The notes under the pieces were generated by a model. That model was not told the origin of the DNA. It did not search any database and saw only the letters and a list, made by a program, of their open reading frames with translations. Made by a program: the position numbers and the translations under genes. DNA of 64,000 nucleotides from Heteronotia binoei (taxonomy: Eukaryota), in NCBI RefSeq assembly GCF_032191835.1, contig NC_083237.1, positions 19,902,001 to 19,966,000 of the forward strand. Reading direction: 5' to 3'. Below, in pieces: positions 13,007 through 63,962 of this stretch. Position 1 is the first letter of the stretch. The number at the start of each line of letters is the position of its first letter.

Positions 13007-13188
13007 CAGGGCTTTTTTTGTAGCAGGAACTCCTTTGCATATTAGGCCACACCTCCCCAATGTAGCCAATCCTCCTGGAGCTTACAATAGGCTCTGTATT
13101 AAGAGCCCTGTGAGCTCCAAGAAGATGGGCTACGTCAGGGGTGTCTGGCCTGATATGTGAAGGAGTTCCTGCTACAAAAAAAGCCCTG
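13007..13188. mobile_element. Palindromic hAT MITE (182 bp, CAGGGCTTTTT termini) in the RNase-a intron
   Basis: Perfect 8-bp TSD GTTTTCAG. Related copies at 23553-24083 (with a nested MITE), 31605-31803, 50922-51140, 59845-60010 and 61407-61582. Confidence 0.9.
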
Positions 13189-41439: not shown

Positions 41440-44400
41440 CTCGGCTTGGCTTCGCGAACGAAGATTTAAGAAGGGTGCAATAGTCCACGTTTGCTGCAGG
41501 CTCGCTGGTGGCTGACAAGACCAATGTGGGACAGGCAGGTCCGGCCACAGCGGCTGCAGGGAAAAGTCTGATTTGGGGTTGGTGCTGTAGCAGTGCGATT
41601 CTTCCTCAATCTCCTTTTGTCCTCAAGACCAGCTATGCGTGTGTTCTCAAAGGAAGAGACAGCCTGGTGGATGGTGTGCCTCCATGCTTTGCGATCTGAG
41701 GCTAGGTCAGACCACTGGTGATGGTTGATGTGACAGGTGCTAAGGGATTTCTTCAAGGAGTCCTTGTACCTCTTCTTTGGTGCCCCTCTATTTCGATGGC
41801 CGGTGGAGAGTTCGCCATACAGGGCAATCTTGGGAAGGCGGTGGTTTTCCATCCTAGAAATATGCCCTGCCCAGCGCAGCTGCGTCTTCAACAGCAGTGC
41901 CTCGATGCTGGTAACCTCTGCCCGCTTGAGGACTTCAGTGTTGGTCACAAAGTCACTCCAGTGGATGTTGAGGATGGTGCGAAGGCAGCGCTGATGAAAG
42001 CGCTCAAGGAGTCGCAGGTGATGACGGTATAAAACCCACGATTCGGAGCCATAGATGAGGGTTGTCATCACAACCGCTTTGTAAACATTGATCTTTGTGC
42101 CTTTTTTCAGATGCTTGTTGCTCCACACTCTTTTGTGCAGTCGGCCAAATGCACGGTTTGCCTTTGCCAGCCTGTTGTCAATCTCCTTGTCGATCTTGGC
42201 ATCTGAGGAGATGATGCACCCTAGGTAGCTGAACTGCTGGACTGTCTTCAGAACTGATTCACCCACAGTGATGCAGGGAGGGTGATAAACTTCCTGGGGT
42301 GCAGGCTGGTGGAGAACTTCTGTCTTCTTCAGACTAACTTCTAGGCCGAATAGCTTGGCAGCCTCTGCAAAGCAGGACGTCATATGCTGCAGAGCTGATA
42401 CCGAGTGGGAGACGAGTGCAGCATCATCAGCAAACAGTAGCTCTCGGATGAGTTTTTCCATTGTCTTGGAGTGGGCCTTTAGTCGCCTCAGGTTGAACAG
42501 GCTGCCATCGGTGCGATAGCGGATGTAGACACCATCGTCCTCATCTAGATCTACTGCGGCTCTTTGAAGCATCATGCTAAAGAAAATCGTAAAGAGAGTT
42601 GGCGCGAGAACGCAGCCTTGCTTTACACCTGTGCCTATTGGGAAGGGCTCCGAGAGGTCGTTGCAGTGTCTGACTTGGCCTCGCTGGTCTTCGTGTAGCT
42701 GGATGATCATGCTGAGGAACCTTGGGGGACATCCTAAACGTTCCAAGATTTGCCACAGGCCTTTCCTGCTAACGGTATCGAAAGCTTTGGTAAGGTCGAC
42801 AAAAGTCACATACAGACCCTTGTTCTGTTCCCTGCATTTCTCTTGGAGCTGCCTGAGAACAAATACCATGTCGGTGGTGCTCCTGTTAGCTCTGAAGCCG
42901 CACTGGCTCTCTGGGAGGAGTTCTTCTGCAATGGTGGGCACCAGTCTGTTCAGGAGTATTCTGGCAAGGATTTTGCCTGCGATGGAGAGCAGGGTTATCC
43001 CCCGGTAGTTGGAGCAGTCTGACTTTTCCCCTTTGTTCTTGTATAGGGTGATGATGATTGCATCACGAAAGTCCTGTGGTAATTTGCCTTGTTCCCAGCA
43101 GGTGACAAGTACTTTGTGAAGTGAGCTATGTAGTACTGTGCCCCCATGCTTCCAGATCTCTGGTGGAATTCCATCAACTCCTGCTGCCTTGCCACTTTTC
43201 AGTTGCTTGATGGCTTTAACAGTCTCTTCTAGGGTGGGGATCTCATCCAACTCTGTTTTCACCGGTTGAAGTGGGGTGAGGTGGATTGCTGAATCTTGAA
43301 CTACGCGGTTGGCACTGAAGAGAACCTGAAAATACTCCGACCACCGGTTCAGTATGGATGCCTTGTCTGTGAGGAGCACTTGGCCGTCTGCACTATGCAA
43401 GGGACTCTGAGCCTGATATGATGGACCATATACTGCCTTCAGGGCTTCGTAGAACCCTCTTAAATCACCAGTGTCTGCACACAGCTGGGTTCTCTCTGCA
43501 AGCTTGGTCCACCACTCGTTCTGAATGTCTCGAAGCTTGCGCTGGAGGTTGCTACATGCAGCGCGAAAGGTTGCTTTTTTCCCAGGACAGGAGTGCTGAG
43601 CAAGATGTGCTTGGTAGGCAGATCTCTTTTTTGCCAGTAATTCTTGGATCTCTTGATTGTTCTCATCAAACCAGTCCTTGTTCTTCCTTGTGGAGAACCC
43701 GAGGACTTCTTCAGAGATCTGCAGGACGGTAGTTTTTAGGTGTTCCCAGAGTGCTTCTGGAGAAGGGTCTGTGGGGCAACTGAGGTCCTCAATTCTTGAC
43801 TGGAGTTTTGCCTGGAAGGCAGCTTTAACTTCGGCTGACTGGAGGCTGCCAACCTGAAACTTCCTCCGAGGGATACCTCCTCTCCTGGGTGTGGGTTTAA
43901 AGTGAAGACGGAGATTGCAGCGTACAAGACGATGATCCGTATGACATTCTGCGCTGGGCATTACTCGGGTGTGTAAGACATCTCGAAGGTCTCTCTGGCG
44001 CACCAGAATGTAGTCGATAAGGTGCCAATGCTTGGACCGTGGGTGCATCCAGGTTGTCTTCAGACTGTTCTTCTGCTGGAAGATAGTGTTGGTGATGGTG
44101 AGCTGGTGCTCCATGCAGAATTCTAGCAGGAGGCGCCCGTTGTCATTGCAGTTGCCAATGCCGTGTTTGCCAAGTACTCCTTTCCAGGCTTCCGAGTCTT
44201 TACCTACTCTGGCATTGAAGTCGCCAAGGATGATCACCTTGTCCTCTGTAGGGGTCTTCCGTACAAGGTTGCGTAGATCAGCATAGAACTTGTTCTTTTC
44301 TGCAGGATCTGCTTGAAGGGTTGGGGCATACACACTGAAGAGTGTTGCATGCTGCTTGTTTTGAAGTGGGAGGCGCATGGACATGATGCGATCTGAGTGA

Positions 44401-45119
44401 CCTGTTGGAAGGTTTTCGAGTTTGGAGGCGATGGAGTTCCTGACCATGAAGCCAACGCCTGAAAGGCGGCTCTCAGCCTTTGACTTACCCGACCAGTAGA
44501 GGGTATAGCCAGCACCGTGTTCTTGAAGACTACCTTCCTCAGGGAAACGGACCTCACTGAGAGCTGCTATGTCGATATTCAACCTGAGAAGTTCGTGGGC
44601 AACTAGAGCAGAGCGTCGTTCAGGGCGACCACTGCCTACTGTGTCAAGCATGGTTCTGATGTTCCAACACGCAAGCTTTAGTCTTTGCACACTTTGTGAG
44701 GCAGGTGCATGCCTTTTCTTTGTTGTTATTTTTCGACCGCAAGTAAGGATGCCCGTTGACCGCGGCTAGCCAACTGGGGTGGGGGAGACGAGCTTTGTTT
44801 AGGCCACCTTTTCTAGGCCCCTCTCCGTGTGGAGCAAGCAGTGCTGTCCCTAGATAAGGCTGCTTGGTCGTTCAGGGTGCTGCCGAAAGATGCTTTCGTC
44901 TCCGGGTTAGCATCAGGCGACCAATATCCTGAACCGCCTACATGCAGGATCGGGACTGCGGCTTCCAGTGGCACCTTCCACCTGCCGTTTCGCCCCTTGC
45001 CTATCGCTGCAGGACTTGATGCGTTGTGAGTTGTGTGTGTGGATATGCCCTTCAGGCCTGCGCAGAGGAATTTTTTAGGTGAAGCGCAGTGTGCGCGGTA
45101 CTGGCTCCACCCTTTCACC
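41440..45119 (-). mobile_element. Full-length RTE-clade LINE (about 3.7 kb)
   Basis: Single long ORF, about 350-bp structured 5' UTR, short 3' tail ...TTCGCGAAGCCAAGCC; inserted at the 3' tail of an L2 fragment. No clear TSD seen. Confidence 0.93.
41466..44690 (-). CDS. RTE polyprotein: AP endonuclease, reverse transcriptase, C-terminal C2H2 finger (1074 aa, uninterrupted)
   Basis: WNIRT, ILGDFNAR, TDHRLV (endonuclease); YRGITLL, QCGFR, DLTKAFD, GVKQGCVLAPTLF, LFADD (RT); CSRCGRTCLSHIGLVSHQRAC. Confidence 0.97.
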   Translation of the reverse strand: MQRLKLACWNIRTMLDTVGSGRPERRSALVAHELLRLNIDIAALSEVRFPEEGSLQEHGAGYTLYWSGKSKAESRLSGVGFMVRNSIASKLENLPTGHSDRIMSMRLPLQNKQHATLFSVYAPTLQADPAEKNKFYADLRNLVRKTPTEDKVIILGDFNARVGKDSEAWKGVLGKHGIGNCNDNGRLLLEFCMEHQLTITNTIFQQKNSLKTTWMHPRSKHWHLIDYILVRQRDLRDVLHTRVMPSAECHTDHRLVRCNLRLHFKPTPRRGGIPRRKFQVGSLQSAEVKAAFQAKLQSRIEDLSCPTDPSPEALWEHLKTTVLQISEEVLGFSTRKNKDWFDENNQEIQELLAKKRSAYQAHLAQHSCPGKKATFRAACSNLQRKLRDIQNEWWTKLAERTQLCADTGDLRGFYEALKAVYGPSYQAQSPLHSADGQVLLTDKASILNRWSEYFQVLFSANRVVQDSAIHLTPLQPVKTELDEIPTLEETVKAIKQLKSGKAAGVDGIPPEIWKHGGTVLHSSLHKVLVTCWEQGKLPQDFRDAIIITLYKNKGEKSDCSNYRGITLLSIAGKILARILLNRLVPTIAEELLPESQCGFRANRSTTDMVFVLRQLQEKCREQNKGLYVTFVDLTKAFDTVSRKGLWQILERLGCPPRFLSMIIQLHEDQRGQVRHCNDLSEPFPIGTGVKQGCVLAPTLFTIFFSMMLQRAAVDLDEDDGVYIRYRTDGSLFNLRRLKAHSKTMEKLIRELLFADDAALVSHSVSALQHMTSCFAEAAKLFGLEVSLKKTEVLHQPAPQEVYHPPCITVGESVLKTVQQFSYLGCIISSDAKIDKEIDNRLAKANRAFGRLHKRVWSNKHLKKGTKINVYKAVVMTTLIYGSESWVLYRHHLRLLERFHQRCLRTILNIHWSDFVTNTEVLKRAEVTSIEALLLKTQLRWAGHISRMENHRLPKIALYGELSTGHRNRGAPKKRYKDSLKKSLSTCHINHHQWSDLASDRKAWRHTIHQAVSSFENTRIAGLEDKRRLRKNRTATAPTPNQTFPCSRCGRTCLSHIGLVSHQRACSKRGLLHPS

Positions 45120-46285
45120 AATACATCATAATTCAAGTACTCTGCTCACGGTTCTGTATGCACAATGGCATGTTCCTCCAAGTGGAGATCTCCTGGAATC
45201 ACAACTGATCTTCAAACTATAGAGAGCAGTTTCCCTGGAGAAAATGGCTGCTTTGGAGGCAGACTCTCTGGCATTATACCCTGCCCAGTCCCCTCCCTTT
45301 CCCAGTCTTCCTTCCCCAGGTTCTACTTCCCAGATCTCCAGGAATTGCTCAACGCAGAGCTGGCAACCTTAACTGTGGGTCAACATTCCCTCTAAGCTGT
45401 GAAATCTTGTGAGCAGAAATTCTACTTCGTGAGCTACTAGCATTATAGTTGTGAGCTACGGGCATTAAAGTTGTGAGCTACTGCATAAATCAGTGTGCTC
45501 TCGGGGTCATCCTTTCTGAGCTATAGGGTTGCCAATCCCCAGGTGATAGAGAAATCCAAAGCACAAGGCTTTCCGTGAAAACCAGCCTCCGTACAACCAA
45601 CAAACTCACTAAACAATACAAGAATACAAAAGCATCTATTAGTTCATGAAAGACCATACAATTAGTCCTTAACAAAATAGGGAACGTGTTCATCAAGAAT
45701 CGATCCAGTCTTTATAGCAATCATTGTTCAGTTCATTCCAAGGAATCCTGGTGAAATAGTTGCGCAGATGATCAATGTCTCTACAGCAATGTAACTACAG
45801 CAGGTGTTGCTCCTGTTGACGTGGTTCTGGCCAAGCTGGGTCGAAGGGGACTAGAAAGCCTTCCTTCTTTTTTTTGCTGTCCAGTCACAGCTGACTTATG
45901 GTGACCCCTGGTTGGGTTTCCGAGACAAGAAAGGTGCAAAGGTGGTTTGCCATTGCTTGCCTCCAGGTCAGCACCCTGGTATTCTTTGGTGGTCTCCAGT
46001 GTTCTCTCTAAGCTGAGCTAGTGCGAGCTAGCTCAAAGTTTTTTAGCCTCTGGCTCACATATTTTTGTCTTAGCTCAGGGAAAATGGTCCCAGGGCAAAC
46101 TAATTTATGCAGTAGCCTTGTGCTTTGGATTTCTCTGCCTATAATTGCCATGATTCTTTTTGTGGGTTGCACAATTCCCAGGTGGGGGCAGGGGATCCCC
46201 CCCACTTCAGGGTAATAAAAAAGCAAGGGGAGGGCAGGGAAATGTCTGCTGGCAACTCTATTATTCCCTATGGAGACATTCCCAT

Positions 46286-47441
46286 AGGAACATAAGAACA
46301 TAAGAGAAGCCATGTTGGATCAGGCCAGTGGCCCATCCAGTCCAACACTCTGTGTCACACAGTGGCCAAAATTTTTTATTTATACACACACACACACACA
46401 CACACATATATACACACACACTGTGGCTAATAGCCACTGATGGACCTCTGCTCCATATTTTTATCTAACCCCCTCTTGAAGCTGGCTATGCTTGTAGCCG
46501 CCACCACCTCCTGTGGCAGTGAATTTCACATGTTAATCACCCTTTGGGTGAAGAAGTACCTCCTTTTATCTGTTCTAACCCGACTGCTCAGCAATTTCAT
46601 TGAATGCCCACGAGTTCTTGTATTGTGAGAAAGCGAGAAAAGTTCTTCTTTTCCATCCCATGCATTATTTTGTAAACCTCTTATCATGTCACCCCGCAGT
46701 CGACGTTTCTCCAAGCTAAAGAGCCCCAAGCGTTTCAACCTTTCTTCATAGGGAAAGTGTTCCAAACCTTTAATCATTCTAGTTGCCCTTTTCTGCACTT
46801 TTTCCAATGCTATGAAATTCTTTTTGAAGTGCGGCGACCAGAATTGCACACAGTATTCCAAATGAGACCGCACCATCGATTTATACAGGGGCATTACGAT
46901 ACTGGCTGATTGTTTTCATTTCCCTTCCTAATAATTCCCATCATGGTGTTGGCCTTTTTTATTGCAATTGCACACTGTCTTGACATTTTCAGTGAGTTAT
47001 CTACCACAACCCCAAGATCTCTCTCTTGGTCAGTCTCTGCCAGTTCACACCCCATCAACTTGTATTTGTAGCTGGGATTCTTGGCCCCAATGTGCATTAC
47101 TTTGCACTTGGCCACATTGAACCTCATCTGCCACGTTGACGCCCACTCACCCAGCCTCAACAGATCCCTTTGGAGTTCCTCATAATCCTCTCTGGTTCTC
47201 ACCACCCTGAACAATTTAGTGTCATCTGCAAACTTGGCCACTTCACTGCTTACTCTCAACTCCAAATCATTTATGAACAAGTTAAAGAGCATGGGGCGCA
47301 GTACTGAGCCCTGCGGCACTCCACTGCTTACCGTCCTCCACTGCGAAGACTGCCCATTTATACTCACTCTCTGCTTCCTATTAATTAGCCAGTTTTTGAT
47401 CCACAAGAGGACCTGTCCTTTTACTCCATGACTCTCGAGCT
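46286..47441 (-). mobile_element. 5'-truncated CR1 LINE (3' part of RT plus tail)
   Basis: SGVPQGSVL, LFNLFINDL, KFADDTKL, HLEYCVQFWSP; (CATAAGAA)n tail at about 46286-46305. Confidence 0.92.
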
Positions 47442-49225
47442 GGAGAATAATGGAGAATTGATCTGCGAGTATCTGGGGCTCTTGTAAGGCTGTTTTTTGA
47501 GATAGAAGCACCACATTTTCAGTATAGCATCCAGTGCCTCTCCCCAAAATACCCCACAAGTTTCACGAAGATTGGACCAGGAGGTCCAATTCTACAAGCC
47601 CCCAAAGAAGGTGACCCTATCCTTCATTATTTCCTATGGAAAGGAGGCATTTAAAAAGGTGTGTGGTCCCTTTAAATGTGATGGCCAGAACTCCCTTCAG
47701 AGTTCAATTATGATTGTCACACCCTTGCTCCTGGCTCCACCCCCAATGTCTCCTGGCTCCACCCCCAATGTCTCCTGGCTCCACCCCCAAAGTCCCCAGA
47801 TATTTCTTGAATTGAACTTGGCAACCCTACTGAGCTAAGCCAGAAATGTGTGAGCTGGAGGCTAAAAATCTGTGAGCTAGCTCATGCTAACTCAGCTTAG
47901 AGGGAACACTGTTGTGGGGTTAGCCTCCCTCCCAAATCATAGATGCAGGGTCTGTTTCCTTAAGCCACCAGTGTCACATGGTCACTGTGAGGTTGCTGGG
48001 CAACCCTCAACCAGCTTTGTAAAGGATTCCAAACCTCTGTTGATGATGATGTGTGTGTGTGGGGTGGGGGGGCATGAGAGAGATAATGAATCAGTCAGTT
48101 GTTTCATAGAGCAGGCGAATAAAGTGTACATCAACCGAGTGGCTGGCAAAAGAGACAGGTCTAAAAGGTAAAAGAAGGGAAGGCAAAAATGGAGGAGGAA
48201 GAAAAAGGGTTTAAATGGAAAGCTGGGAAGGCAAAATAGAAAGAGATATATGGATGGATGAGAGAGTGGGAGACAGGTGCTTTCAAGGGGAGAAACAGAA
48301 AAAAACTATAGAATTAAAGGGGCAGGGTTGGAGTATAGGTCCAACCCTGTAGTACAATGTAGTACAAAATGATCCAGGGATCATTTTGTAGAAAAAGAGG
48401 TGCCTGAGCTCATTAGCACAACCCATTTGCATGTGCTGCACATCCCTGACATCACCGGAAGGTGTACGAAATTATATCAGCTCAGCATCTACCTTAAAAT
48501 GCTTCTGGAATGATAATTGTCATCACAAAACCACAGTGTGGCCCCAGTGGCACGATGAAGATTTCCATCTGTCAGCTTCATATGTTTTGGTTATTTTCCC
48601 CATTTTTGTGTGGGGAAAAATATTAGAAAATTTGTCAACTCCTAGAGTTCAGCAAAAATCTCACAGGAGGTTTCAATGGTGGAGCCCAGAAGCAAGTATT
48701 TTTTGGGGGGGAGGGGTAAGAAAGAGCACAATAAAATTTAGAGGCGTGTTATTTTGAGAGTATTATTTTGTGTACACAGACTGGTTCAGAGAGAGGTCTG
48801 TCTTCAGGACTGATCGTTGAGTAATACAAATGGCACATTCCACAGGGATAACTGTCAGGGACAGTCAGAATTACTATCAAAATTAAACAGAATTGCAGTG
48901 ACACTTCCCAGACTTAGTCCAGCAGGAGGTTTTGTGAGTCAGATTTCCCTTCCTCGCTTTTTCTTAATTCTGCTTCTAGCAGGGCTTGCCCTGGACTATC
49001 TGGCACCCTAGGCAAGGCTACATTCTGCCCCTCCAGCCTCCGCAACAGTGGAGGTTGGTGGACAATGATGTCACCAAGTCATGTGGCGGCACCCGTTTCG
49101 GTGCCCTCAGAAGGCCAGTGTCCTAGGCCAGGGGTTCCCATCCCCCGGTCCATGGACCGGTACTGTTAGCAACCCGTGAGTTGTATAGTTATTTCATTAT
49201 GTATTACAATGTAGTAATAATAACA

Positions 49226-49482
49226 AGAAAAAGATATTGGATTTATATCCTGCCCTCCACTCCAAATCTCAAAGCAGCTCACAATCTCCTTCTTCCCCCA
49301 CAACAGACACCCTGTGAGGTGGGTGGGGCTGAGAGAGCTCTCCAAGAAGCTGCCTTTTCAAGGCCAACTCTGCGAGAGCTACGGCTGACCCAAGGCCTTT
49401 CCAGCAGTTGCAAGTGGAGGAGTGGAGAATCAAACCCGGTTCTCCCAGATAAGAGTCCGCACACTTCACCACCACACCAAAT
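49226..49482 (-). mobile_element. tRNA-derived Sauria-type SINE nested in a MITE
   Basis: Reverse complement of the family consensus. Confidence 0.85.
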
Positions 49483-49713
49483 TAAAGTGCACAATTGTAT
49501 CATCCCGAAACCATGTCTCTCCCCCCCGCCCCCTCTGTCCATGGAAAAATTGCCTTCCGCAAAATGGTCCCTGGTGCCAAAAAGGTTGGGGACCACTGCC
49601 CTAGGCATTCACCTACTTTGCCTAATGGTTGGGCTGGCCCTGGCTGCAACAGACTAATGTGCTCCTCTGGAAAGTAAGGTAAGGCTCTTTATTATTCCAG
49701 GGGAGCTCTAATG

Positions 49714-49850
49714 CAGGGGTGGCCAACGGTAGCTCTCCAGATATTTTTTTGCCTACAACTCCCATCAGCCCCAGTCAGCATGGCCAATGGCTGGGGCTGA
49801 TGGGAGTTGTAGGCAAAAAACATCTGGAGAGCTACCGTTGGCCACCCCTG
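49714..49850. mobile_element. Palindromic hAT MITE (137 bp, CAGGGGTGGCCAA termini)
   Basis: Near-perfect palindrome; perfect 8-bp TSD CTCTAATG. Confidence 0.9.
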
Positions 49851-50157
49851 CTCTAATGAATCCCCCACTGCTCAGTACCCCCTTGTGGCCATATAAGGCA
49901 CTAACAAGCATTGGCATTGAAATTCCCAAGCCTTGTTGTTGTAATGTTTAGCCATTTCCATAAGTTTTAACTTTTAGTGTCACTTTGCAATCTTTAACGA
50001 TCCAATCTTAGAATGTCCGAATGCTAGTAGACATTTGCAATTATTAGCTCCAGGGGTTTTCATAAAGAATATTTTGAAATCTAACCGTTTGTCGAATTTA
50101 GGAGGCAAGAATGTATCCCCACTTGGTTTTAACAGGAACCTGCCAGTAGCTGATACA

Positions 50158-50652
50158 ATGAGAGCTTTTCAGAGACATGCTCTGATTCTCCTGGCTTTCC
50201 AAGTGATGGCATCTGCACTGGAAGACTCTCCCGAGAAAACAAATGGATTTCTACTCTTCTTGAGGCAACACTTTATTCCTGACTATGTTCCCCTGGAAGA
50301 TGTGGACTGTAACCACCTAATGAGTGGTAGTATCCTTACCACCGGGAAATGCAAGAAAGCAAATACCTACATTGTGTCCTTCCCGGATCTTCTCCAGGCT
50401 GTTTGCAATTCCAAAGGAAAGCCCTACAACAACCTCCGGAAAAGCCTGGACCGCTTCGACCTCATTACCTGCACATTGGAAGAAGACATAGCCGAAGAGC
50501 TCTGTAACTACAAGCTGCGTCGCTTCTCTGACTCCATCGTTGTCGGCTGTGATAGATACGGGTATCCTGTTCATCTTGAAGAAAGTTATTTTCAAACAGC
50601 GATGGAAAAGGAGGCCAAAGCCAGCAGGACTTGGTACAACTATTTTTTGTAG
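50158..50652 (+). CDS. RNase A superfamily protein 'RNase-d' (164 aa), acidic, C-terminally extended, opposite orientation
   Basis: Acceptor ttttaacag| at 50135; MRAFQ... signal peptide; FLRQH, CKKANTY, PVHLEE; 6 Cys; AATAAA at 50760-50765. The ORF track's upstream 41 aa are intronic. Confidence 0.93.
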   Translation: MRAFQRHALILLAFQVMASALEDSPEKTNGFLLFLRQHFIPDYVPLEDVDCNHLMSGSILTTGKCKKANTYIVSFPDLLQAVCNSKGKPYNNLRKSLDRFDLITCTLEEDIAEELCNYKLRRFSDSIVVGCDRYGYPVHLEESYFQTAMEKEAKASRTWYNYFL

Positions 50653-51199
50653 TGTTGGACTAATTTTTTTTTTAAATGGCTTGGGTTTTTTTCCAGTTCT
50701 GACCAGGCTTCTTGATACAACGTCAGTACATTCAAATGGAAAAAAAGAAAGAAATGCAGAATAAAGGCAAAGTAGCCGTGTTGGAAAAGGAGAAACGAGG
50801 ATTGAAAAGATCATTTGCACTTTGAAATGTCAGTAAAATGACTTGGTATCCCAAGTGTTCTCTCTCTTTATTTGTTGATAAGTGTAACCATTTTTTTTTG
50901 GGGGGGGAATATTCTTTGTTAGCAGGGCTTTTTTTGTAGCAGGAACTCCTTTGCATATTAGGCCACACACTCCTGATGTAGCCAATCCTCCAAGAGCTTG
51001 GAATTCTAGCAGCGGCTCCTTTGCATATTAGGCCACACACCCCTGATATAGCCAATCCTCCAAGAGCTTACAGTAGGCCCTGTAAGAAGAGCCCTGTAAG
51101 CTCTTGGTGGATTGGCCACATAAGGGGTGTGTGGCCTAATATTAGGGGTCCCAACCCTCCCGCCCTAGCGGGGGACCCCAGGTTTTCCAGCCTCTTCCC

Positions 51200-51830
51200 C
51201 CGCTATCCCAAAAAAACGGAAGCGGGGGAAGAAACGGCGCGAAGGAGCGTGGTGAGCCGCCCCTTCTCCGCTTCACCATGGCTGCTCCTCCGAGATGGGA
51301 TCAGGCTGGGCCCATCTCAAAGGAGCAGCTGGGAGGGGGCGGCAGCGCAGCGGCATCGCCCGCGCCGCCTCTGAAGTGGAGTGGGGGGGCGACCCGGGGG
51401 GGGGGCGGGCCAGGAGCGTGGCGGGGGGTGGGGTGGGAGAGAGAGTGTGCCGCTCCAGGCCGCGCGCGGAAGTGCCTCCCCTTCCTGCTCGGTCTCCAGG
51501 GAAACGCCAAGCAGAGGCTCGCTCGCCCGCCACCCGGCAGCTGCTGGCTTGGCCTCCTGGGGGGTGGGAGCGCGGCTCCCAGGGAGGGCAGGTGGGGGTG
51601 GCTCCTTGCCTGCCCCCCAGGTCCACTTGGGGCGAGGGGGGAGCCGCTGGTGGGCGGGCTGCTGCCATGGCTGGTCCTGCCGCCGCCACTATCCGGATCG
51701 GGGACCAGCTCATCTTGGAGGAAGACTATGATGAGACCTATATCCCCAGCGAGCAAGGTATCCCCTCCTTGCCCTGCCCGGGGGGTGGGGGTCACCCGAG
51801 GGGGGTCTGGGCCCTCCTCTTCCCGCTGTA
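51200..51830 (+). promoter_or_regulatory. CpG island with RFX X-box and ETS site (CEP164-type promoter)
   Basis: Very GC/CpG-rich; GTCTCCAGGGAAAC at 51492-51505 fits the RFX X-box consensus of ciliary genes; CGGAAGT at about 51467. Confidence 0.65.
51667..51757 (+). CDS. CEP164: CEP164 first coding exon ([31 protein letters not shown]); no downstream exon found in the window
   Basis: Near-identical to the recalled human N-terminus [28 protein letters not shown]; gccATGG Kozak; phase-1 donor G|GTATCC; upstream acceptor ccccccag at about 51619. Confidence 0.9.
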
Positions 51831-54639
51831 GGGTTGCCAATCCCCAGGTGGGGGCAGGGGATCCCCTGGTTTGGAGGCCCTACCCCCACTTCAGGGTCGT
51901 TAGAAAGCGGGGGGAGGGGAGGGGAATGTCTGCTGGGAACTTTATTATTCCCTATGGAGATGTATTCCCATAGGAAATAATGGAGAATTGATCCGCGGGT
52001 ATCTGGGGCTCTGGGGGGGCTGTTTTTTGAGGCAGAGCACCAAATGTTCAGTACAGCATCTAGTGCCTCTCCCCAAAATACCCCCCCCCCCCAAGTTTCA
52101 AAATGATTGGACCAAGGGGTCCAATTCTATGAGCCCCAAAAGAAGGTGCCCCTATCCTTCATTACTTCCTATGGGAGGAAGGAATTGAAAAGGTGTGCCG
52201 TCCCTTTAAATGTGATGGCCAGAACTCCCTTTGGAGTTCATGATGCTTGTCACAGCCTTGATCTTGACTCCGCCCCAAAGTCTCCTGGCTCCACACTCAA
52301 AGTCTCCTGGCTCCACCCCCAAAGTCCCCAGATATTTCTTAAATTGGACTTGGCAACCCTACCTAATATGCAAAAGAGTTCCTGATAAAAAAAGCCCTGC
52401 TTCATGAAACATTTTTGTTGCTTTGTGCTGTCAAGTCAGGGCAGACTTACGACAACGCCAGAGCAGGCCCTAGACTGTCCGGCACCCTAGGCAAGGCTAA
52501 CTTCTGGTGCCCCCCCCCCTGCACTGTTAATGTCAACGAGTCACATGGGGGGTGCCCAATTGGGTGCCCCCAGAAGGCCAGCGCCCGAGGTAATTACCTA
52601 GTTTGCCTACTGGCAGGGCTGGCCTTGGGCAATGCCATAGGGTTTTCAAGGCAAGAGACATTCAGAGGTGGTTTGCCCTTGCCTGCCTCTGTGTCTTTAG
52701 AGGTCTCCCACCCAAATGCCAGCCGGGACTGAACCCTGCCTACCTTCTGAGATCTGATGAGACCAGGCTGGCCTCTCCTCAAAACACCCCTAAAGTTTCA
52801 AAAAGATTGGACTAGGGGGCCCAATTCTATGTGCCCCAAAAGAAGGTGCCCCTATCCCTCATTATTTCCAAAGGGAGGGAAGGTATTTAAAAGGAATGCA
52901 GTCCCTTTAAATGTGGCGGCCAGATCTTAACTTCAGAGTTCACTCATGCTTGTCAGTGTCCCAGAATCTCCTGGCTCTACCCCCAAAGTCCCCAGAGTTG
53001 GACCTGGCAACCCTTTTGTAGTTGATGTCGGAAGCTGGAATTTAATAAAGGGTGTCCAAAACTTCACAAGCAATCCTGATACATTGGAGTCTGTGTCCAG
53101 GTCCGGCTTCTGCCCCCAACTTAGCCCCTCTCCCACCAGGCAAGCCACAAAGAATCCATTACTCAGAGAGGAAGGCAGCAGCTAATCTAGGAGCAGTGGC
53201 CAGGCAGGTCTTGACAATCCCCAGGTCTCAGTGGGGGTTTTGCTTTCCCAGGCTCCTTCCTGCTCCCAGTCAGCTGGCCAGCGGGGGCAAAGCCCCGCTC
53301 CCACAGCCACCATGTGCCTTTCCACCTCCGGAGGCTACAGACTCCTTGGGATGGTGTGTCTGTGTCTTTAAGGCTGAATGGGGGCAGGGGGCGGGGAACT
53401 GGCAGAACAAGATGGCTGCTCCCAGTGGCTGTAAAAGCAGCCCAGACCCTCCATTGGTTGCACAGTCTTTTCAGAGGTCGTTTGCATACGAAAGGTGAAC
53501 TTGAACCTTTGGTTGTTCTGTGTTACTTTGAAGAAGTTGGAAGTTCAACTGGTGAGTAGATTCTTCAGAGTTGTCAGAAAGGGGGGGCGGGGCGGGGGAG
53601 GGAAATGTCTGCTGGGCACTTCTTTATTCCCTATGGAGATCGATTCTCATAGGGTATAATGGAGAATTGATCTGGGGGTATCTGGGGCTCTGGAGGGGCT
53701 GTTTTTTTAGATAGAGGCACCAAATTTTCAGCATAGCATCTGATGGCTCTCCCCAAAATGGTCTCCAAGTTTCAAAACGATTGGACATGGGAGTCCAATT
53801 CTATGAGCCCCTAAAGAAGGTGCCACTATCCTTTATTTCTAATGTAGGGAAGGCATTTAAAGGTGTGAGGTTCCTTTAAATGTGATGTCCAGAAGTCCCT
53901 TTGGAGTTCAATTGTGCGTGTCACAACATTGCTCCTGGCTCCGCCCCAATGTCTCCTGGCTCCACCCCCAAAGTCTCCTGGTTCCACCACCAAAGTCCCC
54001 AGATATTTCTTGAATTGGCCTTGGCAACCCTACCAGGCAGTGAAAGGCCCCAACCAAGTAGTCATCCTTGTTATTGCCAAAGAGGAAGCTGGAAGCTTGG
54101 TGGCATATGGGGTGAACGCAGGCAGCCAGGAAGGGCCAGGGTAAGAAGAAGATGGAGGAGGGAGGCTGGGCCTGATACCTTTACAGCCCAAGAGGAACAG
54201 CAAAGGGCAGACAACCCTCAGAGTGGTTTCCACTCTCCTGCTGCCACTTGCAGGAAGAGGTGGGCCCAAACCCTACATGTACCCAAGGTCCAGGGGGTGA
54301 GGCCAAGGGTGGTATATTAGGGAGGCTTCCAAGCCAGGCTGGAGCCAGGCTGGGGAGGAAAAACTGGGTGGAGCACACAGACCTAGATAGTGAGAGGGAG
54401 CAAGGGTGTGCTCACTTGGAGCGGAGGAAGAGAACCAAGGTGCCTGAGCTCCTTCTTCCCATTCTGAGGCCAGCAGAGATGCTGGTCTGAATTAGGGATG
54501 TTGGCCTCCAGGTGGGATAGGGGGATCTCCTGGAATTGCAGCTCATCCCCAGACTTCAGAGTCTGGAGCTTTGGAGGGTGGACTTGATGGAATTCTGCCC
54601 CACTGAGGTCATCCCCAGGCTCCATCCCTGAATCTCCTG

Positions 54640-56392
54640 GGCCGTTTTCGCACTAGCGTTTACTCCGGGGTGGCATCCCATTTAGCTCCTGATCTTTTGC
54701 TGGTTTTCGCACATGTTGCTCCGCGGTCACGGTTTGATCCGCGGCTTCAGCAGTTTCACCCCGCAGTATCTGAATGCGGATGCAAGTGGAGTTTCCTAAA
54801 ACCTCCAGATCCACTCCGCGGATTTTTAAGTGGGAAACTCATCAGATCCGCATCGACTGCTTTGGGGCGGCACCCTCCTCTGCCTTTCAGTCCTCCCACT
54901 CCATCCCTACGCTGCTGGCCTGGCCAATCATCAGCCGTGTTCATGGTGCTTCCAAAACGTGCCTGCCCAGCCATTTTTTTCTTCATTTCAGTTCCTTGCG
55001 TAACAGCGATATTTCACAGCTACGAAATTTCGATCCCTGCAGACATAAGTGTTGGGGGGGCGGGGGTGGAATCTAGTGCCGGCGTGGGCCAAAGCGAAGC
55101 AGCGGCTTGGTTCCCTGGGGCCAGGAGAACCTGCCAGCTTGAGCGGCCCCATCTGCGCTCCGAATTCACGCTGCGCCAGCCAGCTCCCCAGCCAGGCGTG
55201 GCGGAGGCGCAGCTGGGAGCGCATGTGCCAGGCGGGCCCTGGAGCGCACTTGCGGCGGCCACCGCGCCCCACTCATGCCTCCCGCGGGCTTGGCATGCCC
55301 CTCGGGACGGCAGCAGCACCCGAGCGGACTCGCCCCTCAAGAGCTACGCCTCGGCTTCATGGAGAGACGGGACGGGACAAGACGAGAGAGCCCCGGGAGC
55401 GCCTGGCCTCCTTCCTCGCCTGCTCCGTGGTTGCGCAGCTGGAGGCGGACCCTGGCCCCCTGCTCGCTCGCCTGGGCTCCGCTGCCGCTCCTGCTGCCCA
55501 GCTCCTAATCGCTGGCTCACAGCACACACTGCCTCTCTCTACTCCTCTGCCTTGAAATTTTATACCTCCCTCCCATGACATCTCTGAGACCGGGATGGGG
55601 AAAGGGGGAGCCAAAGAGGGTTCTCCAAGCCCAACCTTCACATCCAGCACAGTTTTAATGTGTTCAACAGGCGCGTCTTGTGGAAAGGCCGGGAGGGAGC
55701 AAGGCTGGGAAGGGAAGAAGCTGCCACACACACACACACACACACAAACACCCTCTCTCTCTCTCTTGATTGCCCCTCGATTTCTCTCTCTCTCTTCAGG
55801 CTGTCAGCGTTATTGCGATATTTCGCAACTCCGGAATTTGGTCATACGGAACTACAGAATCAGGGTCGATCCCTGCGGACATAAGTGTTGGGGGGGGGGG
55901 AATCTAGTGCTGGGAGGCTTCTCATGGAAGTGAGACTCCTTGCATATGCATTAATCAGTTGGCGTCCAGCGTACAGGCACAAAAGCAAAACCTCCACTCT
56001 GGAATAAAGACACGCCACAGGCTTGTTATCCAGATTCTCCACTGTGAATGCTTCTGTCAATACATAAAGGGCTGTGGAGGATGCTACAGCTGCAGCCAAT
56101 CCATAAGCAGAAGCGGCACACGTAATGCGGTTTGCCCACGAAAAGAAGGGGAAGGAACAGCTGTGACCGCTCATTGTTACGTTGTTATGTAGTAACGCAA
56201 CCAGACTTGCGCTTAAAAAAAAAAGATTGACAGGGCATCGAACTCAAGTCGATGCTAGTGCGAAAACGATTTGAGCCGGGGCTTCATGGAAAGCGACTGC
56301 GCAAAAGAGACAATGTGCGAAAACGAGGAAAATGATCCGGACATATTTCCTCCGCGGAATACCGGTAGCAAACGCTAAGTGCGAAAACGCCC
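54640..56392. mobile_element. Non-autonomous PIF/Harbinger-type DNA transposon (1753 bp) nested in a MITE
   Basis: 14-bp TIRs GGCCGTTTTCGCAC / GGGCGTTTTCGCAC; 3-bp TSD CTG at 54637-54639 and 56393-56395; subterminal copies of the TIR motif. Confidence 0.8.
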
Positions 56393-57846
56393 CTGGAGTT
56401 TTCCAGCTTAGATGGAACACTGCCTGGAAGGCAGAAACACATCCCACCACCCTTGCCAGTTGCCAGGCTGAAGCCCTGGGGTGACAACAGCTGGTACCTG
56501 CAACCAACACATGCCAGAAACTGCCCATATTGTGCAGCATTCTCAGCCATATGGACTAGAAACATTTTTTTTAAAAAAAGTATGGTTCCAAAGATGGTTG
56601 AAAACCTGAAACTGCCTTAGGGTTGCCAAGTCCAATTCAAGTAATATCTGGGGACTTTGGTGGCGGAGCCAGGAGACATTGGGGGTGGAGCCAGGAGACA
56701 TTGGGGGTGGAGCCAGGAACAAGGGTGTGACAAGCATAATTGAACTCCAAGGGTGTTCTGGCCATCACATTTAAAGGGGCAGCACACCTTTTCAAATGCC
56801 TTTCTTCCATAAGAAATAATGAAGGATAGGTGCACCATATTTTGGGGCTCATAGAATTGGACCCCCTGGTCCAATCGTTTTGAAACTTGGGGGGTATTTT
56901 GGGGAGAGGCACTAATGCTATACTAAAAATTTGGTGCCTCTACCTCAAAAAAAGCCCCCCCCCAATACCCGCGAATCAATTCGCCATTATTCCCTATGGG
57001 AATCGTTCTCCATAGGGAATAATAGAGTGCCCAGTAGACATTTCCCTCCCCCCTCACACTTTCTAAAGCAGGGGGAGGGCCTCCAAACCAGGGAATCCCC
57101 TGCCCCCTCCCTCTCTCTCACACACAAATACTGGGTCTTGTTCCTGCAGAACTTTACTTGCTCTGAAAACAAAAGCAAAAGAAAGGGAGGGGCCGTTATC
57201 TGAGGAAACTGTTACTGATCCTTTCCCATGAAGCTTTTCCTGTTTCCTGCTTCCTGCTCAGTCTTGAGGGCACACATTTTAAAAATGGACCTGTTTGCAG
57301 GTTTCTAAACCTGCAGGAGCTCTAAAACTACAGGATGACTGTGGGGGCAGGGCTTCCCCCGCCGCCCAGCTGTCTGGGGGCGGGGAGAAGCCTGTAAAAA
57401 CGGGGGATCCCCTGCTGGGACCTGGGGATTGGGAAGCCTACTTAGACTGAATCCAACCCTTGATCCATCAAGGTCAATCTTGTCTACTCAGATTGCTCTC
57501 CAGGGGCTCAGGCAGAGGTCTTTCCCACCACCTGGCCCTTTTAGCTGGAGATGCTGAGATTGAACCTGGGACCTTCTGCATGACAAAGCAGAGCTTCTTC
57601 CACCGAGCCTCAGCCCCGCCCCACATAGGTGGCTCTGTCTCAGCTACCAACTCCCACACTTGTGCAGAGAAACGATGGGTGTGCCCTGTTTGGAAACCAG
57701 ATTTCTGTGGAGTTAGGATTCTAAAATACGGTTAGCAAATTGGTGTTTCTGCAGGACAGATCTGAGGGTCAGTCTGCCTGCCCAGTCTCTAGCAGCCAAG
57801 GGCAGATTCCTCTAGACTGCAGCATGCCATGAGGCCACACAAGGTG

Positions 57847-60776: not shown

Positions 60777-61205
60777 CTAAATAATTCTGTGGAAGTGTAC
60801 TGGCTGCGACGCATTATTGCAGAGCACTTCGATACGTCTGTAGTCGGTCCAGCCCCTGTAGTTACAGGGGGGCCTCATGCGACGTCCCCCAGTGGCTTCA
60901 CAGTTAGTGAGATTAAAGGAGGCATGGCTATCAGTGTAGTTGCCAACACGGGTCCCTGCGGTGGTGCAGATGGCATCTACGTCGTTTGCAGGGTTATGGA
61001 TGAAAGAGTTGAGATATTTGCAGATGCGGCGGGTCATCCCTCTCCTCTGCATCATGAGGTTGCAATAGAGCCGGTCAGTCAGCTGGGGACTGGTCTTTGG
61101 GTAGTCCATATGTTTCCTCTGGAAGTCCTGGTAGGTAGGTTGTGGGGAGGCTGGCAAGGGCCCCAGCAGGATCAACAGGAGGAGCAGCATTGGACAGGCT
61201 GACAT
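60777..61205 (-). CDS. RNase A superfamily protein 'RNase-e' (142 aa), cationic, closest paralogue of RNase-c
   Basis: Acceptor cccccag| at 61224; signal peptide near-identical to RNase-c (LLLLL.LLGPLPAS); FQRKH, CKYLNSF, PVHF; 6 mature Cys. Confidence 0.96.
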   Translation of the reverse strand: MSACPMLLLLLILLGPLPASPQPTYQDFQRKHMDYPKTSPQLTDRLYCNLMMQRRGMTRRICKYLNSFIHNPANDVDAICTTAGTRVGNYTDSHASFNLTNCEATGGRRMRPPCNYRGWTDYRRIEVLCNNASQPVHFHRII

Positions 61206-63962
61206 TGCAGCTACAGTGTCGATCTGGGGGACTGAAGGATAAAAAAGCAGATTATTAATTATCTTGCTTCCAAACACATATGTGCAACATAATGTAAAAA
61301 GCTCGTGTTCCCTACTGCCTATTAGCCACACACACCCTTCCCAAGTCAATCGGCTGTGTTGCTGAGATTCATGAACATCCTGGCTGTTGGTTGGGAAGGA
61401 GATAGCCTGGGCTTTTTTTTTATAGCAGGAACTCCTTTGCATATTAGGCCACACCACGTGATGTAGCTAATCCTCCAAGAGCTTACAAGGCTGTTAGTGC
61501 AGGGCCTACTGTAAGCTCCAGGAGGATTGGCTACCTCAGGGGGGTGTCGCCTAAAAGGAGTTTCTGCTGCAAAACAGCCCTGGAAATAACAATCACGGAA
61601 CGCTGACAACAGGACAACTCCTGCAAGGGAAGCAAATGGTTCCTTTAGCTGAGCAGAAACACAGCACTGTAATCTGTGTATAGGAAGGAATGCCCAGAGG
61701 TAGATGTTCTGCTGCGTGACTCAGAGCTTGGAAGCCAAGGCAAAGAAGAAGAAGAAGGAAAAGGAGTTAAGAAAGAAAAACAATGTCTCATCATCAATGG
61801 TATTCCATTCATCTCGATGTGGGGTGGTGCTAACCACTGTCTTGCCTGCCCTTTCAACCACCTTTGTTAACCCCCCCCCCCATGGGTTACCAAGGCCAAC
61901 TCCAGAGGAGTGTATCACTGTAGCATGCCAAGGAGTCAAGGCAGGTGGTTAATGACTTTTGCAGGCTCTCACAAGTTAACTCAGGGCACAAACTTGGGGT
62001 ACGACAAGGACAGAGTCAAGGTGTGCTAAGTAAAATAAAGAAGACAGTTACTAAGTCCTGCACAGTCCCCATCAATGATGACCTCTATGAGGGGAATCAA
62101 AGTAAGTTTATTCATTAAATGAAGACGTTACAGGTCCAAGACTCCATCTTGGTGAGACAGGGGCACTCAGGCTCAGGATGACAATTATACTCTTGGGTTC
62201 AGACGAGGTCTCATTTTGGGTAGGAGCTCACAGGAGCAGAACTCTGGAGCCTATACATTTTATTGTGTTCTTTTGTTCTTAATCCCACCCCACCCCCCAC
62301 CCCCCCAAAAAAACCTTGCTTCTGGGCTCCAAACCCCCTGTGAGAATTTTGCTGAACTCTAGGATTTGACAAACTTTCTAATATTTCCTCCCCCCCCAAA
62401 AAATTGGGAAAATAGCCAAAACATAAAACAGACAGGTAGAAGTCTTCATCATGCCACTGTGGCCACGTAGGAAAAAGTAATTTAAAAAGCATGATGAGAG
62501 TGAGGTTTTATGATGACAATTATAATTCAAGAAACATATTAAGGTAGCTACGGAGCTGATAAAACTCAGTCCACCTTCCAGTCAGGGGTGTGTGGCATGT
62601 GCAAGTGAGTTGTGCTAATGAGCTCCGGCACCTCTTTTTCTACAAAATGACCCCTGGTCCAGATTGTTTTGAAAGTGAAAGCCTCCAAGCCATGGCCTTC
62701 AACTCAAGCCGTACCATGCACTTAGGGTGAGAAAGTTACTTGCAGAATATTACAGACATAATACAGTTCATAAGCTAGCAAGCATGTTAAACATAGCAAT
62801 TCCCCTCTACAGCAGTTCTCGTTACAGCAGTTGTCTTGACGCCAAAATGGAGGTGCTCATGGCAAGAAGCATTCTTGACACTAACTAGGTACTAGGGTTG
62901 CCGGATCTGACTCAGGGAATATCTGGGGACAACAGGGGTGGAGCCAGGAGCAAGGCTGGGACAAGCATGATTGAATTCCGAAGGAAGTTCTGGACATCAA
63001 GTTTAAAGAGACTATGCTCCTTTTCAATGCCTTCCTTCCATTGCAAATAATGGCGGATGGGGGCACATTATTTGGGGGCTTTAGTGGTCCAATCTTTTTA
63101 AAACTTGGAGGGGGGGGAGGAGAGGCACCAGATGTAATGCTGAAAATTTGGTACCTCTACCTCAAAAAACAGCCCCCTCCAAGCCCTAAATACCCATGAA
63201 TAGTTTCTCCATTATATCCTATGGGACCAGTCTCCATAGGGTATAATGGAGTGTCCAGCAGACATTCGCCCCCCCCCCTTGCTTTCTAATAACCCTGAAG
63301 TGGGAGGAGGGCCTCCAAACCAGGGGATTCCCTGCCCTGGGGATTGTTATGCAGCTGTACTTACTATTCAATGGACCAGGAGGGGAGGAGGAGGGGGAAC
63401 CATCAGAAAGGTTCAGGAGCTGTGCCTCTGTGAGCTCCTGCTGAATTCAAGTCCTGGCAAGGTATAAACTCAAAGAACCCTTGGATGAGAAGCCTGAATG
63501 AGACATGAATTCAAACCAGTCTCCATAGGGAATAATGGAGTGCCCAGCAGACATTTCCCTCCACCACCCTTGCTTTCTGATAACCCTGAAGTGGGAGGAG
63601 GGCCTCTAAACCAGGGGATTCCCTGCCCTGGGGATTGGCAACCCTACTAGGCACTTACAATCAACACACACTAAAGGAATGCAGCAATTTTTTCCAGGCC
63701 AGTTTGGCCAGAGATCCTGGAGGAATTATTTTTTTTTTTGCCTTCTTCTGGGTGTGGAGCAGGGGTCACTGGGAGTGTGTGTGTGTGTGTGTGTGGGGGG
63801 GGGTTGAGAGGTAGCTGTGAATTCCCTGCATTGTACAGGGGGTTGGAGGAGATGACCCTGGAGGTGCCTTCCAACTCTATGATTCTGTTCTTCTTATGAC
63901 AACACCCTGTCTGCTGCTCAGTTTCCTGTCTCCCTAATAACTCATCCCTCATAGCAACTCAC

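What the first reader, a model, noticed from the sequence alone, without database searches (positions are those of the whole stretch)
51200..51830. CEP164 promoter and first coding exon embedded inside the RNase cluster
Seen: about 1 kb downstream of the RNase-d stop is an undecayed CpG island with an X-box (51492-51505) and a clean CEP164 first coding exon with the phase-1 donor. I found no EILEFAREIGIDP/WW-domain exon in the remaining 12.2 kb. Established: human CEP164 lies at 11q23, unlinked to the RNase/METTL17 locus. Inference: either (i) a relocated or duplicated CEP164 whose large intron contains RNase-e in antisense, or (ii) a transplanted 5' fragment that gives the cluster a new RFX-responsive promoter, possibly producing chimeric or antisense transcripts. 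The retained CpGs suggest it is unmethylated or recently inserted.
Basis: partly seen in the sequence, partly recalled or inferred. Interest (0 to 1): 0.78.

Follow-up and report, generated by a model that had tools for sequence, protein, structure and literature searches.

The report
Transposon-carried copy of CEP164 gene start
The CEP164 promoter and first exon seen beside the gecko RNase genes are not a moved gene: they are a 1.2-kb cut-and-paste (hAT-type) transposon that carries a copy of the gene's start, landed inside another small transposon, and showed almost no RNA in the sample read.

Summary
A GC-rich, CpG-rich stretch (51200-51830) contains a clean CEP164 first coding exon: ATG at 51667, last base 51757, GT donor, phase 1. 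Neither bird CEP164 N-termini nor the gecko's own 1259-aa CEP164 match any other exon in the 64 kb.

The piece lies inside a 1219-bp insert (51143-52361) with hAT-like ends (TAGGG...CCCTA). A perfect 8-bp target-site duplication, CCTAATAT, flanks it. Removing the insert restores the right arm of a host MITE.

The insert is a composite:
- a diverged left end of MITE family "B"
- the CEP164 promoter, exon 1 and 71 nt of intron 1
- a full B copy

The annotated Heteronotia binoei CEP164 gene lies on a different chromosome record of the same assembly. So reading (i), a relocated gene, is refuted. Reading (ii), a transplanted 5' fragment, is right, and the vehicle is a Pack-type hAT transposon.

In two RNA runs the exon had at most about 4 reads, against 30-125 on RNase-d 1 kb away. 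No listed splice joint leaves 51757.

The X-box is only a relaxed match. The island looks partly decayed (CpG o/e 0.54).

This scan already found the same CEP164-carrying family elsewhere in this genome (s1-335859, s1-345456; about 90 copies, not re-counted here). This is another copy of a known kind.

The parts
50923..51142 (+). Host MITE 'A', left part. It starts with the terminal repeat CAGGGCTTTTTTTGTAGCAGG. The left arm is partly duplicated (50934-50999 / 51004-51069) and the element runs to the point of interruption.
   Evidence: At least 8 other A copies lie in the window. The copy at about 13012-13183 has an 8-bp target duplication, GTTTTCAG. Heterogeneous loose ends at 50923 in all four runs mark a repeat boundary.
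51135..51142 (.). Left copy of the 8-bp target-site duplication CCTAATAT (host MITE A sequence).
   Evidence: it is identical to 52362-52369 and lies immediately outside the insert ends.
51143..52361 (+). Composite non-autonomous hAT-type transposon (Pack-hAT), 1219 bp. Ends: TAGGGGTCCCAA... and ...TTGGCAACCCTA.
   Evidence: Perfect 8-bp TSD. Removing the insert restores the A right arm GGGGTGTGTGGCCTAATATGCAAAAGAGTTCCTGATAAAAAAAGCCCTG, as in other A copies. No Pfam domain in its long ORFs.
51143..51250 (+). Diverged left end of the B MITE family; it forms the left arm of the composite. Read depth suggests that mid-repetitive sequence may extend to about 51400.
   Evidence: Global alignment to the B left end scores z = 6.8 against 500 shuffles. 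Nine contigs cover 51300 in run X1 and depth is raised in 51201-51400 only.
51400..51666 (+). Captured CEP164 upstream region: GC-rich putative promoter and 5'UTR. The left limit is uncertain and lies somewhere in 51250-51490.
   Evidence: GC 0.74, CpG o/e 0.56. No other copy in the window. The promoter is not alignable to Pogona at this distance.
51492..51505 (+). X-box-like motif GTCTCCAGGGAAAC, two positions off the RFX consensus.
   Evidence: The Pogona CEP164 promoter has GTTGCCATAGGAAC about 250 bp upstream of its ATG.
51667..51757 (+). Copy of the CEP164 first coding exon: 30 codons plus 1 base, with a phase-1 GT donor at 51758-59.
   Evidence: Compared with the annotated gecko CEP164 N-terminus ([14 protein letters not shown]...) it is 2 residues shorter, with Ala to Thr in the alanine run.
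51758..51828 (+). A 71-nt stub of CEP164 intron 1, cut off by the B element.
   Evidence: The sequence is unique up to 51828 and the B repeat starts at 51829.
51829..52361 (+). Full copy of MITE family 'B' (TAGGGTTGCCAA...TTGGCAACCCTA); it forms the right arm of the composite.
   Evidence: Eleven B copies aligned. The copy at 21263-21778 has a perfect 8-bp TSD, TGTTGTGC. This copy has no TSD of its own (TCCCGCTG against CCTAATAT). Heterogeneous loose ends at 51829 and 52361.
52362..52399 (+). Host MITE A, right terminal part. Its first 8 bases (52362-52369) are the right copy of the TSD CCTAATAT. It ends ...AAAAAAAGCCCTG.

Best explanation
The CEP164 promoter-and-exon-1 piece is cargo of a 1219-bp non-autonomous hAT-type composite transposon (a Pack-hAT, 51143-52361).

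Inferred origin: at the true CEP164 locus, a B-family MITE end lay upstream of the promoter, and a full B MITE sat 71 nt into intron 1. A hAT transposase supplied in trans used the outermost inverted ends. It cut out and pasted the whole unit, promoter and first exon included.

Shown here: one such copy inserted into the right arm of an A-family MITE about 480 bp downstream of RNase-d, and duplicated 8 bp (CCTAATAT). It carries no other CEP164 exon and cannot encode CEP164. The functional gene is annotated on another chromosome record.

In the RNA sampled, the copy is essentially silent and no splicing from its donor was seen. The partly reduced CpG content is what I would expect if the copy were methylated like other transposons; methylation itself was not measured.
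For: - TSD and ends: a perfect 8-bp direct repeat, CCTAATAT, lies exactly at both edges of the insert. The ends are TAGGGGTCCCAA and TAGGGTTGCCAA (reverse complement).
- Empty site: deleting 51143-52369 recreates a normal A-MITE right arm, as in other copies in the window.
- B is itself a mobile element with 8-bp TSDs: 11 copies were aligned, and the copy at 21263-21778 is flanked by TGTTGTGC. The left arm of the composite is homologous to the B left end, z = 6.8.
- The internal B copy has no TSD of its own, as expected if the composite moved as one unit.
- Repeat boundaries at 50923, 51829 and 52361 are confirmed by reads that run into many different flanks.
- Only exon 1 of CEP164 is present in the 64 kb.
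- The annotated H. binoei CEP164 (P0175, 1259 aa, WW domain) lies on an 84.15-Mb record. The window is on the 68.09-Mb record CM063339.1 of the same assembly.
- In Pogona, exon 2 follows exon 1 by about 350 bp, and a gene with many Ig domains lies downstream, which I take for DSCAML1.
- RNA: at most about 4 reads over 51401-51800, against 30-125 over RNase-d in the same run. No joint or loose end at 51757 was listed.
- No Pfam domain in the composite's ORFs.
- Earlier scan notes report the same family elsewhere in this genome.
Against: - I could not read the true CEP164 locus: its gene range is too long for the tool. So the capture boundaries, the presence of B elements at the source and the age of the copy are all inferred.
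- The two terminal repeats match at only 11 of the first 20 bases.
- No autonomous hAT with these ends was identified.
- The host A MITE has no TSD of its own.
- Only about 6% of each RNA run was read, the tissues are unknown, and most joint and loose-end rows were not shown. Weak or tissue-specific activity is therefore not excluded.
Confidence: 0.9

Rival explanations
1. Relocated or duplicated functional CEP164. On this reading the piece is the real 5' end, exon 2 lies beyond the window's right end, and a long first intron holds RNase-e in antisense.
For: The exon and its donor are intact, and 22 residues are identical to the annotated gecko protein. The gecko gene has long introns: its range is 119 kb.
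Against: The fragment is bounded by transposon ends and a perfect TSD inside a MITE. The intron sequence stops after 71 nt, at a B terminal repeat. The annotated CEP164 is on another record. No other exon occurs in the window. Almost no RNA was seen, and no listed joint at 51757.
Confidence: 0.02
2. Exapted promoter. The transposed CEP164 promoter is active in some tissue, such as ciliated cells or testis. It would drive a non-coding or chimeric transcript through the RNase cluster, antisense to RNase-e.
For: The core promoter, an X-box-like site, the ATG and the donor all survive. CpG content is still well above background, at 0.54 against 0.31. Only about 6% of two RNA runs was read.
Against: Depth was at most about 4 reads at 90% likeness or more, and those reads may come from the true gene or sister copies. 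No supported joint was seen. The X-box is off consensus at two positions. CpG o/e is lower than in a native CEP164 island.
Confidence: 0.06
3. Assembly artefact (misjoin), or a segmental duplication that did not involve a transposon.
For: GC-rich repeats are hard to assemble. The only other copy of this locus I fetched comes from the same assembly, so it is not independent.
Against: A misjoin would not create an exact 8-bp duplication at the ends of inverted repeats, nor a host MITE that can be restored precisely. A retrocopy is excluded because promoter and intron sequence are present.
Confidence: 0.02

Closest known systems
Pack-TIR / Pack-hAT elements of animals (Tan et al. 2021, Nat Commun 12:4280, PMC8277862)
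   Same: A non-autonomous TIR transposon with a host gene fragment between its ends, flanked by TSDs, and with the parental gene elsewhere. hAT is the commonest carrier: 208 of 370 cases in that paper. Its frog example, hAT-N8_XT, also carries a 5'UTR piece.
   Different: Here the cargo is a whole CpG-island promoter with the first coding exon and its donor. The unit is built from two B-family MITE ends, so it is a composite rather than an insertion into one element. According to earlier notes of this scan the family is multicopy (about 90), whereas that paper found multicopy Pack-TIRs only in a few cases in frog and alligator. I did not verify the copy number here.
Pack-MULEs of plants
   Same: Capture and amplification of GC-rich 5' gene fragments by TIR transposons (PMC5861414, listed; the comparison is from my own knowledge).
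   Different: The superfamily is different: Mutator, with 9-bp TSDs and long TIRs. The host kingdom is different too.
Sister copies in this genome found earlier by this scan (s1-335859, s1-345456), and similar composites carrying CHCHD3 and CCDC50 first exons (s1-321094, s1-321089)
   Same: The same gene fragment (CEP164 promoter and exon 1), the same kind of hAT-bounded unit of about 1.3 kb, and an 8-bp TSD.
   Different: The insertion site differs: here it is inside an A-family MITE, downstream of RNase-d. I could not align the copies, because no sequences were available from the notes.
Native CEP164 locus (Pogona vitticeps, L002)
   Same: The first coding exon is 84% identical in DNA over 81 nt and has the same phase-1 donor. 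It has a CpG island and an X-box-like motif upstream of the ATG.
   Different: The native locus continues with exon 2 after about 350 bp, and I located the first four coding exons within 5 kb; the whole gene spans 25 kb. A gene with many Ig domains lies next to it, which I take for DSCAML1. The gecko window copy stops 71 nt into the intron and lies among RNase A genes.

Membership tests
Functional CEP164 gene | WW-domain exon(s) and the remaining coding exons downstream of exon 1 | tested here: not met
   tblastn with bird N-termini and with the gecko's own 1259-aa CEP164 hits exon 1 only in the 64 kb. The motif scan was negative.
Functional CEP164 gene | Conserved neighbourhood: a DSCAML1-like Ig gene downstream, as at the Pogona locus | tested here: not met
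   The neighbours here are RNase A genes at 50035-50652 and 60777-61457. Pogona L002 has a 2072-aa gene with many Ig domains downstream. The annotated gecko CEP164 is on another record.
Functional CEP164 gene | Transcription, with splicing from the exon-1 donor | tested here: inconclusive
   Depth was at most about 4 reads and no joint at 51757 was listed. Only about 6% of two runs was read, and many rows were not shown.
hAT-superfamily non-autonomous transposon | 8-bp target-site duplication | tested here: met
   CCTAATAT at 51135-51142 and 52362-52369. A B-family copy at 21263-21778 also has an 8-bp TSD.
hAT-superfamily non-autonomous transposon | Short terminal inverted repeats starting YARNG (consensus recalled from the hAT literature) | tested here: met
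   TAGGGGTCCCAA against the reverse complement TAGGGTTGCCAA: 10 of the first 12 bases match, and 11 of the first 20.
hAT-superfamily non-autonomous transposon | A related autonomous element encodes a hAT transposase that recognises these ends | not tested
   No transposase lies in the unit. The genome could not be searched with these tools.
Pack-TIR (gene-fragment-carrying TIR transposon) | Internal host-gene fragment, with the parental gene at another locus | tested here: met
   CEP164 exon 1 lies inside the unit. The parental gene model P0175 is on an 84-Mb record of the same assembly.
Pack-TIR (gene-fragment-carrying TIR transposon) | Several copies with different TSDs, as proof of repeated transposition | not testable with these tools
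The gecko assembly is not searchable here. Reads show only that 51143-51400 is mid-repetitive.
CpG island (Gardiner-Garden and Frommer criteria: over 200 bp, GC over 0.5, o/e over 0.6) | CpG observed/expected above 0.6 over at least 200 bp | tested here: met
51200-51399 has o/e 0.82.
RFX X-box | Match to GTNRCC-N(0-3)-RGYAAC | tested here: not met
   GTCTCCAGGGAAAC departs at two positions. The strict pattern has 0 matches in the window. The relaxed pattern has 2 matches, with 1.0 expected by chance.

The most novel reading that the evidence does not exclude
The copy is not dead. As one of many dispersed CEP164 promoter copies, it would keep RFX and ciliogenic responsiveness and fire in ciliated or germ cells, giving the RNase A cluster a new transcript antisense to RNase-e. 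More broadly, a multicopy Pack-hAT family in this gecko would be spreading ready-made CpG-island promoters with splice donors, so that new first exons could be recruited genome-wide.
Probability: 0.06. Interest if true: 0.7.

Novelty: new member of a known kind. Interest (0 to 1): 0.3.

Why it matters
This removes a false lead. There is no relocated CEP164 and no break of synteny, only a mobile copy of the gene's start.

It also adds one well-resolved insertion to a vertebrate Pack-hAT family that moves a complete promoter, first exon and splice donor. The TSD, the ends and a restorable empty site are all shown. A published survey of animals found multicopy gene-carrying TIR transposons to be rare (PMC8277862). 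The family, rather than this copy, is therefore worth a genome-wide census.

For annotation, such copies can seed false first exons or chimeric gene models.

Tried and rejected
- Word search with the 178-aa ORF through the exon. It found only CEP164 N-terminal fragments of birds and two unnamed contigs, and no sister copies from this gecko. The collection holds gene models, not ORFs, for this assembly.
- Fetching the true gecko CEP164 locus. No DNA was returned, because the gene range of 119 kb is too long.
- Gecko relatives Paroedura and Sphaerodactylus. These isoforms are not on record.
- Aligning the captured promoter to Pogona. Only the coding exon aligns, so the capture boundaries could not be set by comparison.
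- The look-up of sequencing runs. No run holds more than 12% of the sampled words, and no whole-genome raw reads of the species were offered, so copy number could not be measured from depth.
- The search of earlier findings by sequence. Blank.
- Literature search for the terminal-repeat strings. Only chance primer matches.
- A TSD for the host A MITE. None found: TTTGTTAG against CTTCATGA. This probably reflects the partly duplicated left arm and has no bearing on the composite.
- Retrocopy. Rejected, because promoter and intron sequence are present.

Full report
**What is there**

The window is CM063339.1:19902001-19966000 of assembly GCA_032191835.1. I established this by exact look-up of the RNase-d protein and by identity of the fetched locus with window 44158-56652. 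NCBI names proteins of this assembly Heteronotia binoei.

At 51200-51830 the GC fraction rises to 0.65-0.72. CpG observed/expected in the 200-bp bins is 0.82, 0.59 and 0.43, against 0.31 for the whole window.

The exon:
- Bases 51667-51756 translate to [30 protein letters not shown].
- One more base (G, 51757) precedes GT, so the donor is phase 1.
- The peptide matches human CEP164 residues 7-32 in PDB entry 7nwj at E 2.7e-9.
- It matches bird CEP164 N-termini at E about 4e-12.
- It matches the gecko's own annotated CEP164 (P0175), whose first exon reads [32 protein letters not shown].

No other CEP164 exon is in the 64 kb. A motif scan, tblastn with bird N-termini that include the WW domain, and tblastn with the full 1259-aa gecko protein all hit exon 1 only.

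Two caveats apply to the observation:
- The 'X-box' GTCTCCAGGGAAAC fits only a relaxed pattern that chance gives about once per window. It misses the RFX consensus at two positions.
It is not undecayed.

**Anatomy**

Self-comparison and repeat finding show three nested layers.

(a) MITE family 'A'. Its ends are CAGGGCTTTTTTTGTAGCAGG...CCTGCTACAAAAAAAGCCCTG. The window holds at least eight further copies, and one of them has the 8-bp target duplication GTTTTCAG. The copy here occupies 50923-52399.

(b) A 1219-bp insert splits that copy at 51143-52361. The insert begins TAGGGGTCCCAA and ends TTGGCAACCCTA. It is flanked by a perfect 8-bp direct repeat, CCTAATAT (51135-51142 and 52362-52369). Removing the insert and one repeat copy gives ...GGGGTGTGTGGCCTAATATGCAAAAGAGTTCCTGATAAAAAAAGCCCTG. 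That is the normal right arm of family A, as seen in the other copies.

(c) The insert is itself a composite.
- Its right 533 bp (51829-52361) are a full copy of a second dispersed family, 'B'. I aligned eleven B copies from the window. Their ends are TAGGGTTGCCAA...TTGGCAACCCTA, and the copy at 21263-21778 has a perfect 8-bp duplication, TGTTGTGC.
- Its left 100 bp or so are a diverged B left end, with alignment z = 6.8 against shuffles.
- Between the two arms lie the GC-rich CEP164 upstream region, the first coding exon and 71 nt of intron 1.
- The internal B copy has no target duplication of its own (TCCCGCTG against CCTAATAT). This is expected if the unit moved as a whole, using its outermost ends.
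- The long ORFs of the unit have no Pfam domain, so it encodes no transposase.

An 8-bp duplication together with short YARNG-type ends is the signature of the hAT superfamily. The consensus is recalled from the literature.

**Evidence from reads**

One call laid two raw RNA runs, one set of RNA contigs and one small DNA run on 50001-56000.
- Reads that match families A and B pile up to hundreds or thousands.
- They run off into many different sequences exactly at 50923, 51829 and 52361 (loose-end agreement 0.35-0.54). This independently marks those three positions as repeat ends.
- The stretch 51201-51400 is mid-repetitive, with nine contigs over 51300 in one run.
- RNase-d (50001-50800) is covered at summed depth 30-125 in run X18 and at zero in X19. 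The reads carry fixed differences from the assembly, so the RNA comes from the right organism or a close lineage.
- The CEP164 piece (51401-51800) has at most about 4 reads in either run. Those reads could equally come from the true gene or from sister copies.
- No joint or loose end at 51757 is among the listed rows.

Only about 6% of each run was read and many rows were not shown. This is absence of support, not proof of silence.

**Where the real gene is**

A full HMMER search with a bird N-terminal fragment gave full-length CEP164 representatives. A word search with one of them listed 'centrosomal protein of 164 kDa [Heteronotia binoei]' (P0175, 1259 aa, WW domain). It lies on an 84,150,879-bp record. 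The look-up places it in the same assembly with a gene range of 119 kb. The window's record is 68,086,271 bp, so the gene is on another chromosome record. Its DNA could not be fetched.

I used the Pogona vitticeps locus (L002) as a squamate reference:
- Exon 1 is followed by exon 2 after about 350 bp.
- The gene spans 25 kb.
- A 2072-aa gene with many Ig domains lies downstream in the opposite orientation. I take it for DSCAML1, by recall of the human order.
- The island has CpG o/e 0.75-1.0.
- An X-box-like palindrome, GTTGCCATAGGAAC, lies about 250 bp upstream of the ATG.

Only the coding exon aligns between the gecko copy and Pogona (84% over 81 nt), so this remains a suggestion.

**Mechanism**

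Shown:
- The unit is an insertion with hAT hallmarks inside another MITE.
- It carries only the 5' end of CEP164.
- The annotated gene is elsewhere.

Inferred:
- At the source locus, a B-type end upstream of the promoter and a B element 71 nt into intron 1 were used together by a hAT transposase supplied in trans. The intervening promoter and exon therefore moved as cargo (composite or Pack-type mobilisation).

I could not see the source locus, so the capture boundaries are uncertain; the left limit lies somewhere in 51250-51490. The date of insertion is also open. The exon copy differs from the annotated protein only in the alanine run, being 2 residues shorter with one Ala to Thr.

CpG o/e between the transposon arms is 0.54. 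The adjacent B copy has 0.17 and a native squamate CEP164 island has 0.75-1.0. This fits a copy that has begun to lose CpGs, but it is not a measurement of methylation.

**Comparison with what is known**

Gene-fragment-carrying TIR transposons are documented in animals. Tan et al. 2021 (PMC8277862) report 370 Pack-TIRs in 100 species, 208 of them hAT, and found multicopy cases only in a few frog and alligator examples.

This scan had already flagged the same thing in this genome. Notes s1-335859 and s1-345456 describe hAT composites carrying the CEP164 promoter and first exon at other loci. One follow-up gave about 90 copies and no transcription. Other notes describe similar units carrying CHCHD3 and CCDC50 first exons.

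Those notes gave me the lead. The TSD, the ends, the empty-site restoration, the location of the real gene and the RNA check are my own tests on this copy. The copy number is not.

**Verdict**

Interpretation (i) is refuted. Interpretation (ii) is right in outline, but the agent is a transposon, and nothing shows that the promoter works here. This is a further member of a known kind and has been seen before in this scan on other DNA. The interest lies mainly in the family as a whole.

Noticed in passing
window 54631-56401: The second CpG-rich island of the region (about 55083-55806, o/e up to 0.83) also sits inside a TIR-bounded element. The ends are 24-nt inverted repeats (88% complementary), with the motif GTTTTCGCAC repeated near both ends. 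Direct repeats of about 85-105 bp (54998-55082 and 55807-55913) flank the island. This may be another CpG island captured by a transposon. RNA depth there was about zero.
   Followed up: partly
window 50001-50852: RNase-d is transcribed in RNA run X18 (summed depth 30-125) but not in X19, and molecules end near 50852. The reads carry fixed differences from the assembly: 8 substitutions and a 3-nt deletion at 50704 in all reads. The RNA therefore comes from another individual or lineage.
   Followed up: partly
window 23553-24083: Another A-family MITE copy carries an internal insert of about 340 bp (23606-23950) between its arms. Its flanks, CTGCTTCT and ATGCTTTT, match at 6 of 8 positions. Family A may also pick up filler DNA.
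   Followed up: no
window 41466-44690 (-): An uninterrupted 1074-aa ORF that looks by eye like a non-LTR retrotransposon ORF2 (endonuclease and reverse transcriptase), and so possibly a young LINE copy. I ran no family scan on it.
   Followed up: no
L002 9738-9751 (Pogona vitticeps CEP164 promoter): An X-box-like palindrome, GTTGCCATAGGAAC, lies about 250 bp upstream of the CEP164 ATG inside a strong CpG island. It is a candidate RFX site of the native gene.
   Followed up: partly
window 51829-51840 and 52350-52361, and all B copies: The terminal repeats of MITE family B (TAGGGTTGCCAA / TTGGCAACCCTA) contain the RFX half-sites GTTGCC and GGCAAC. This is probably incidental.
   Followed up: no
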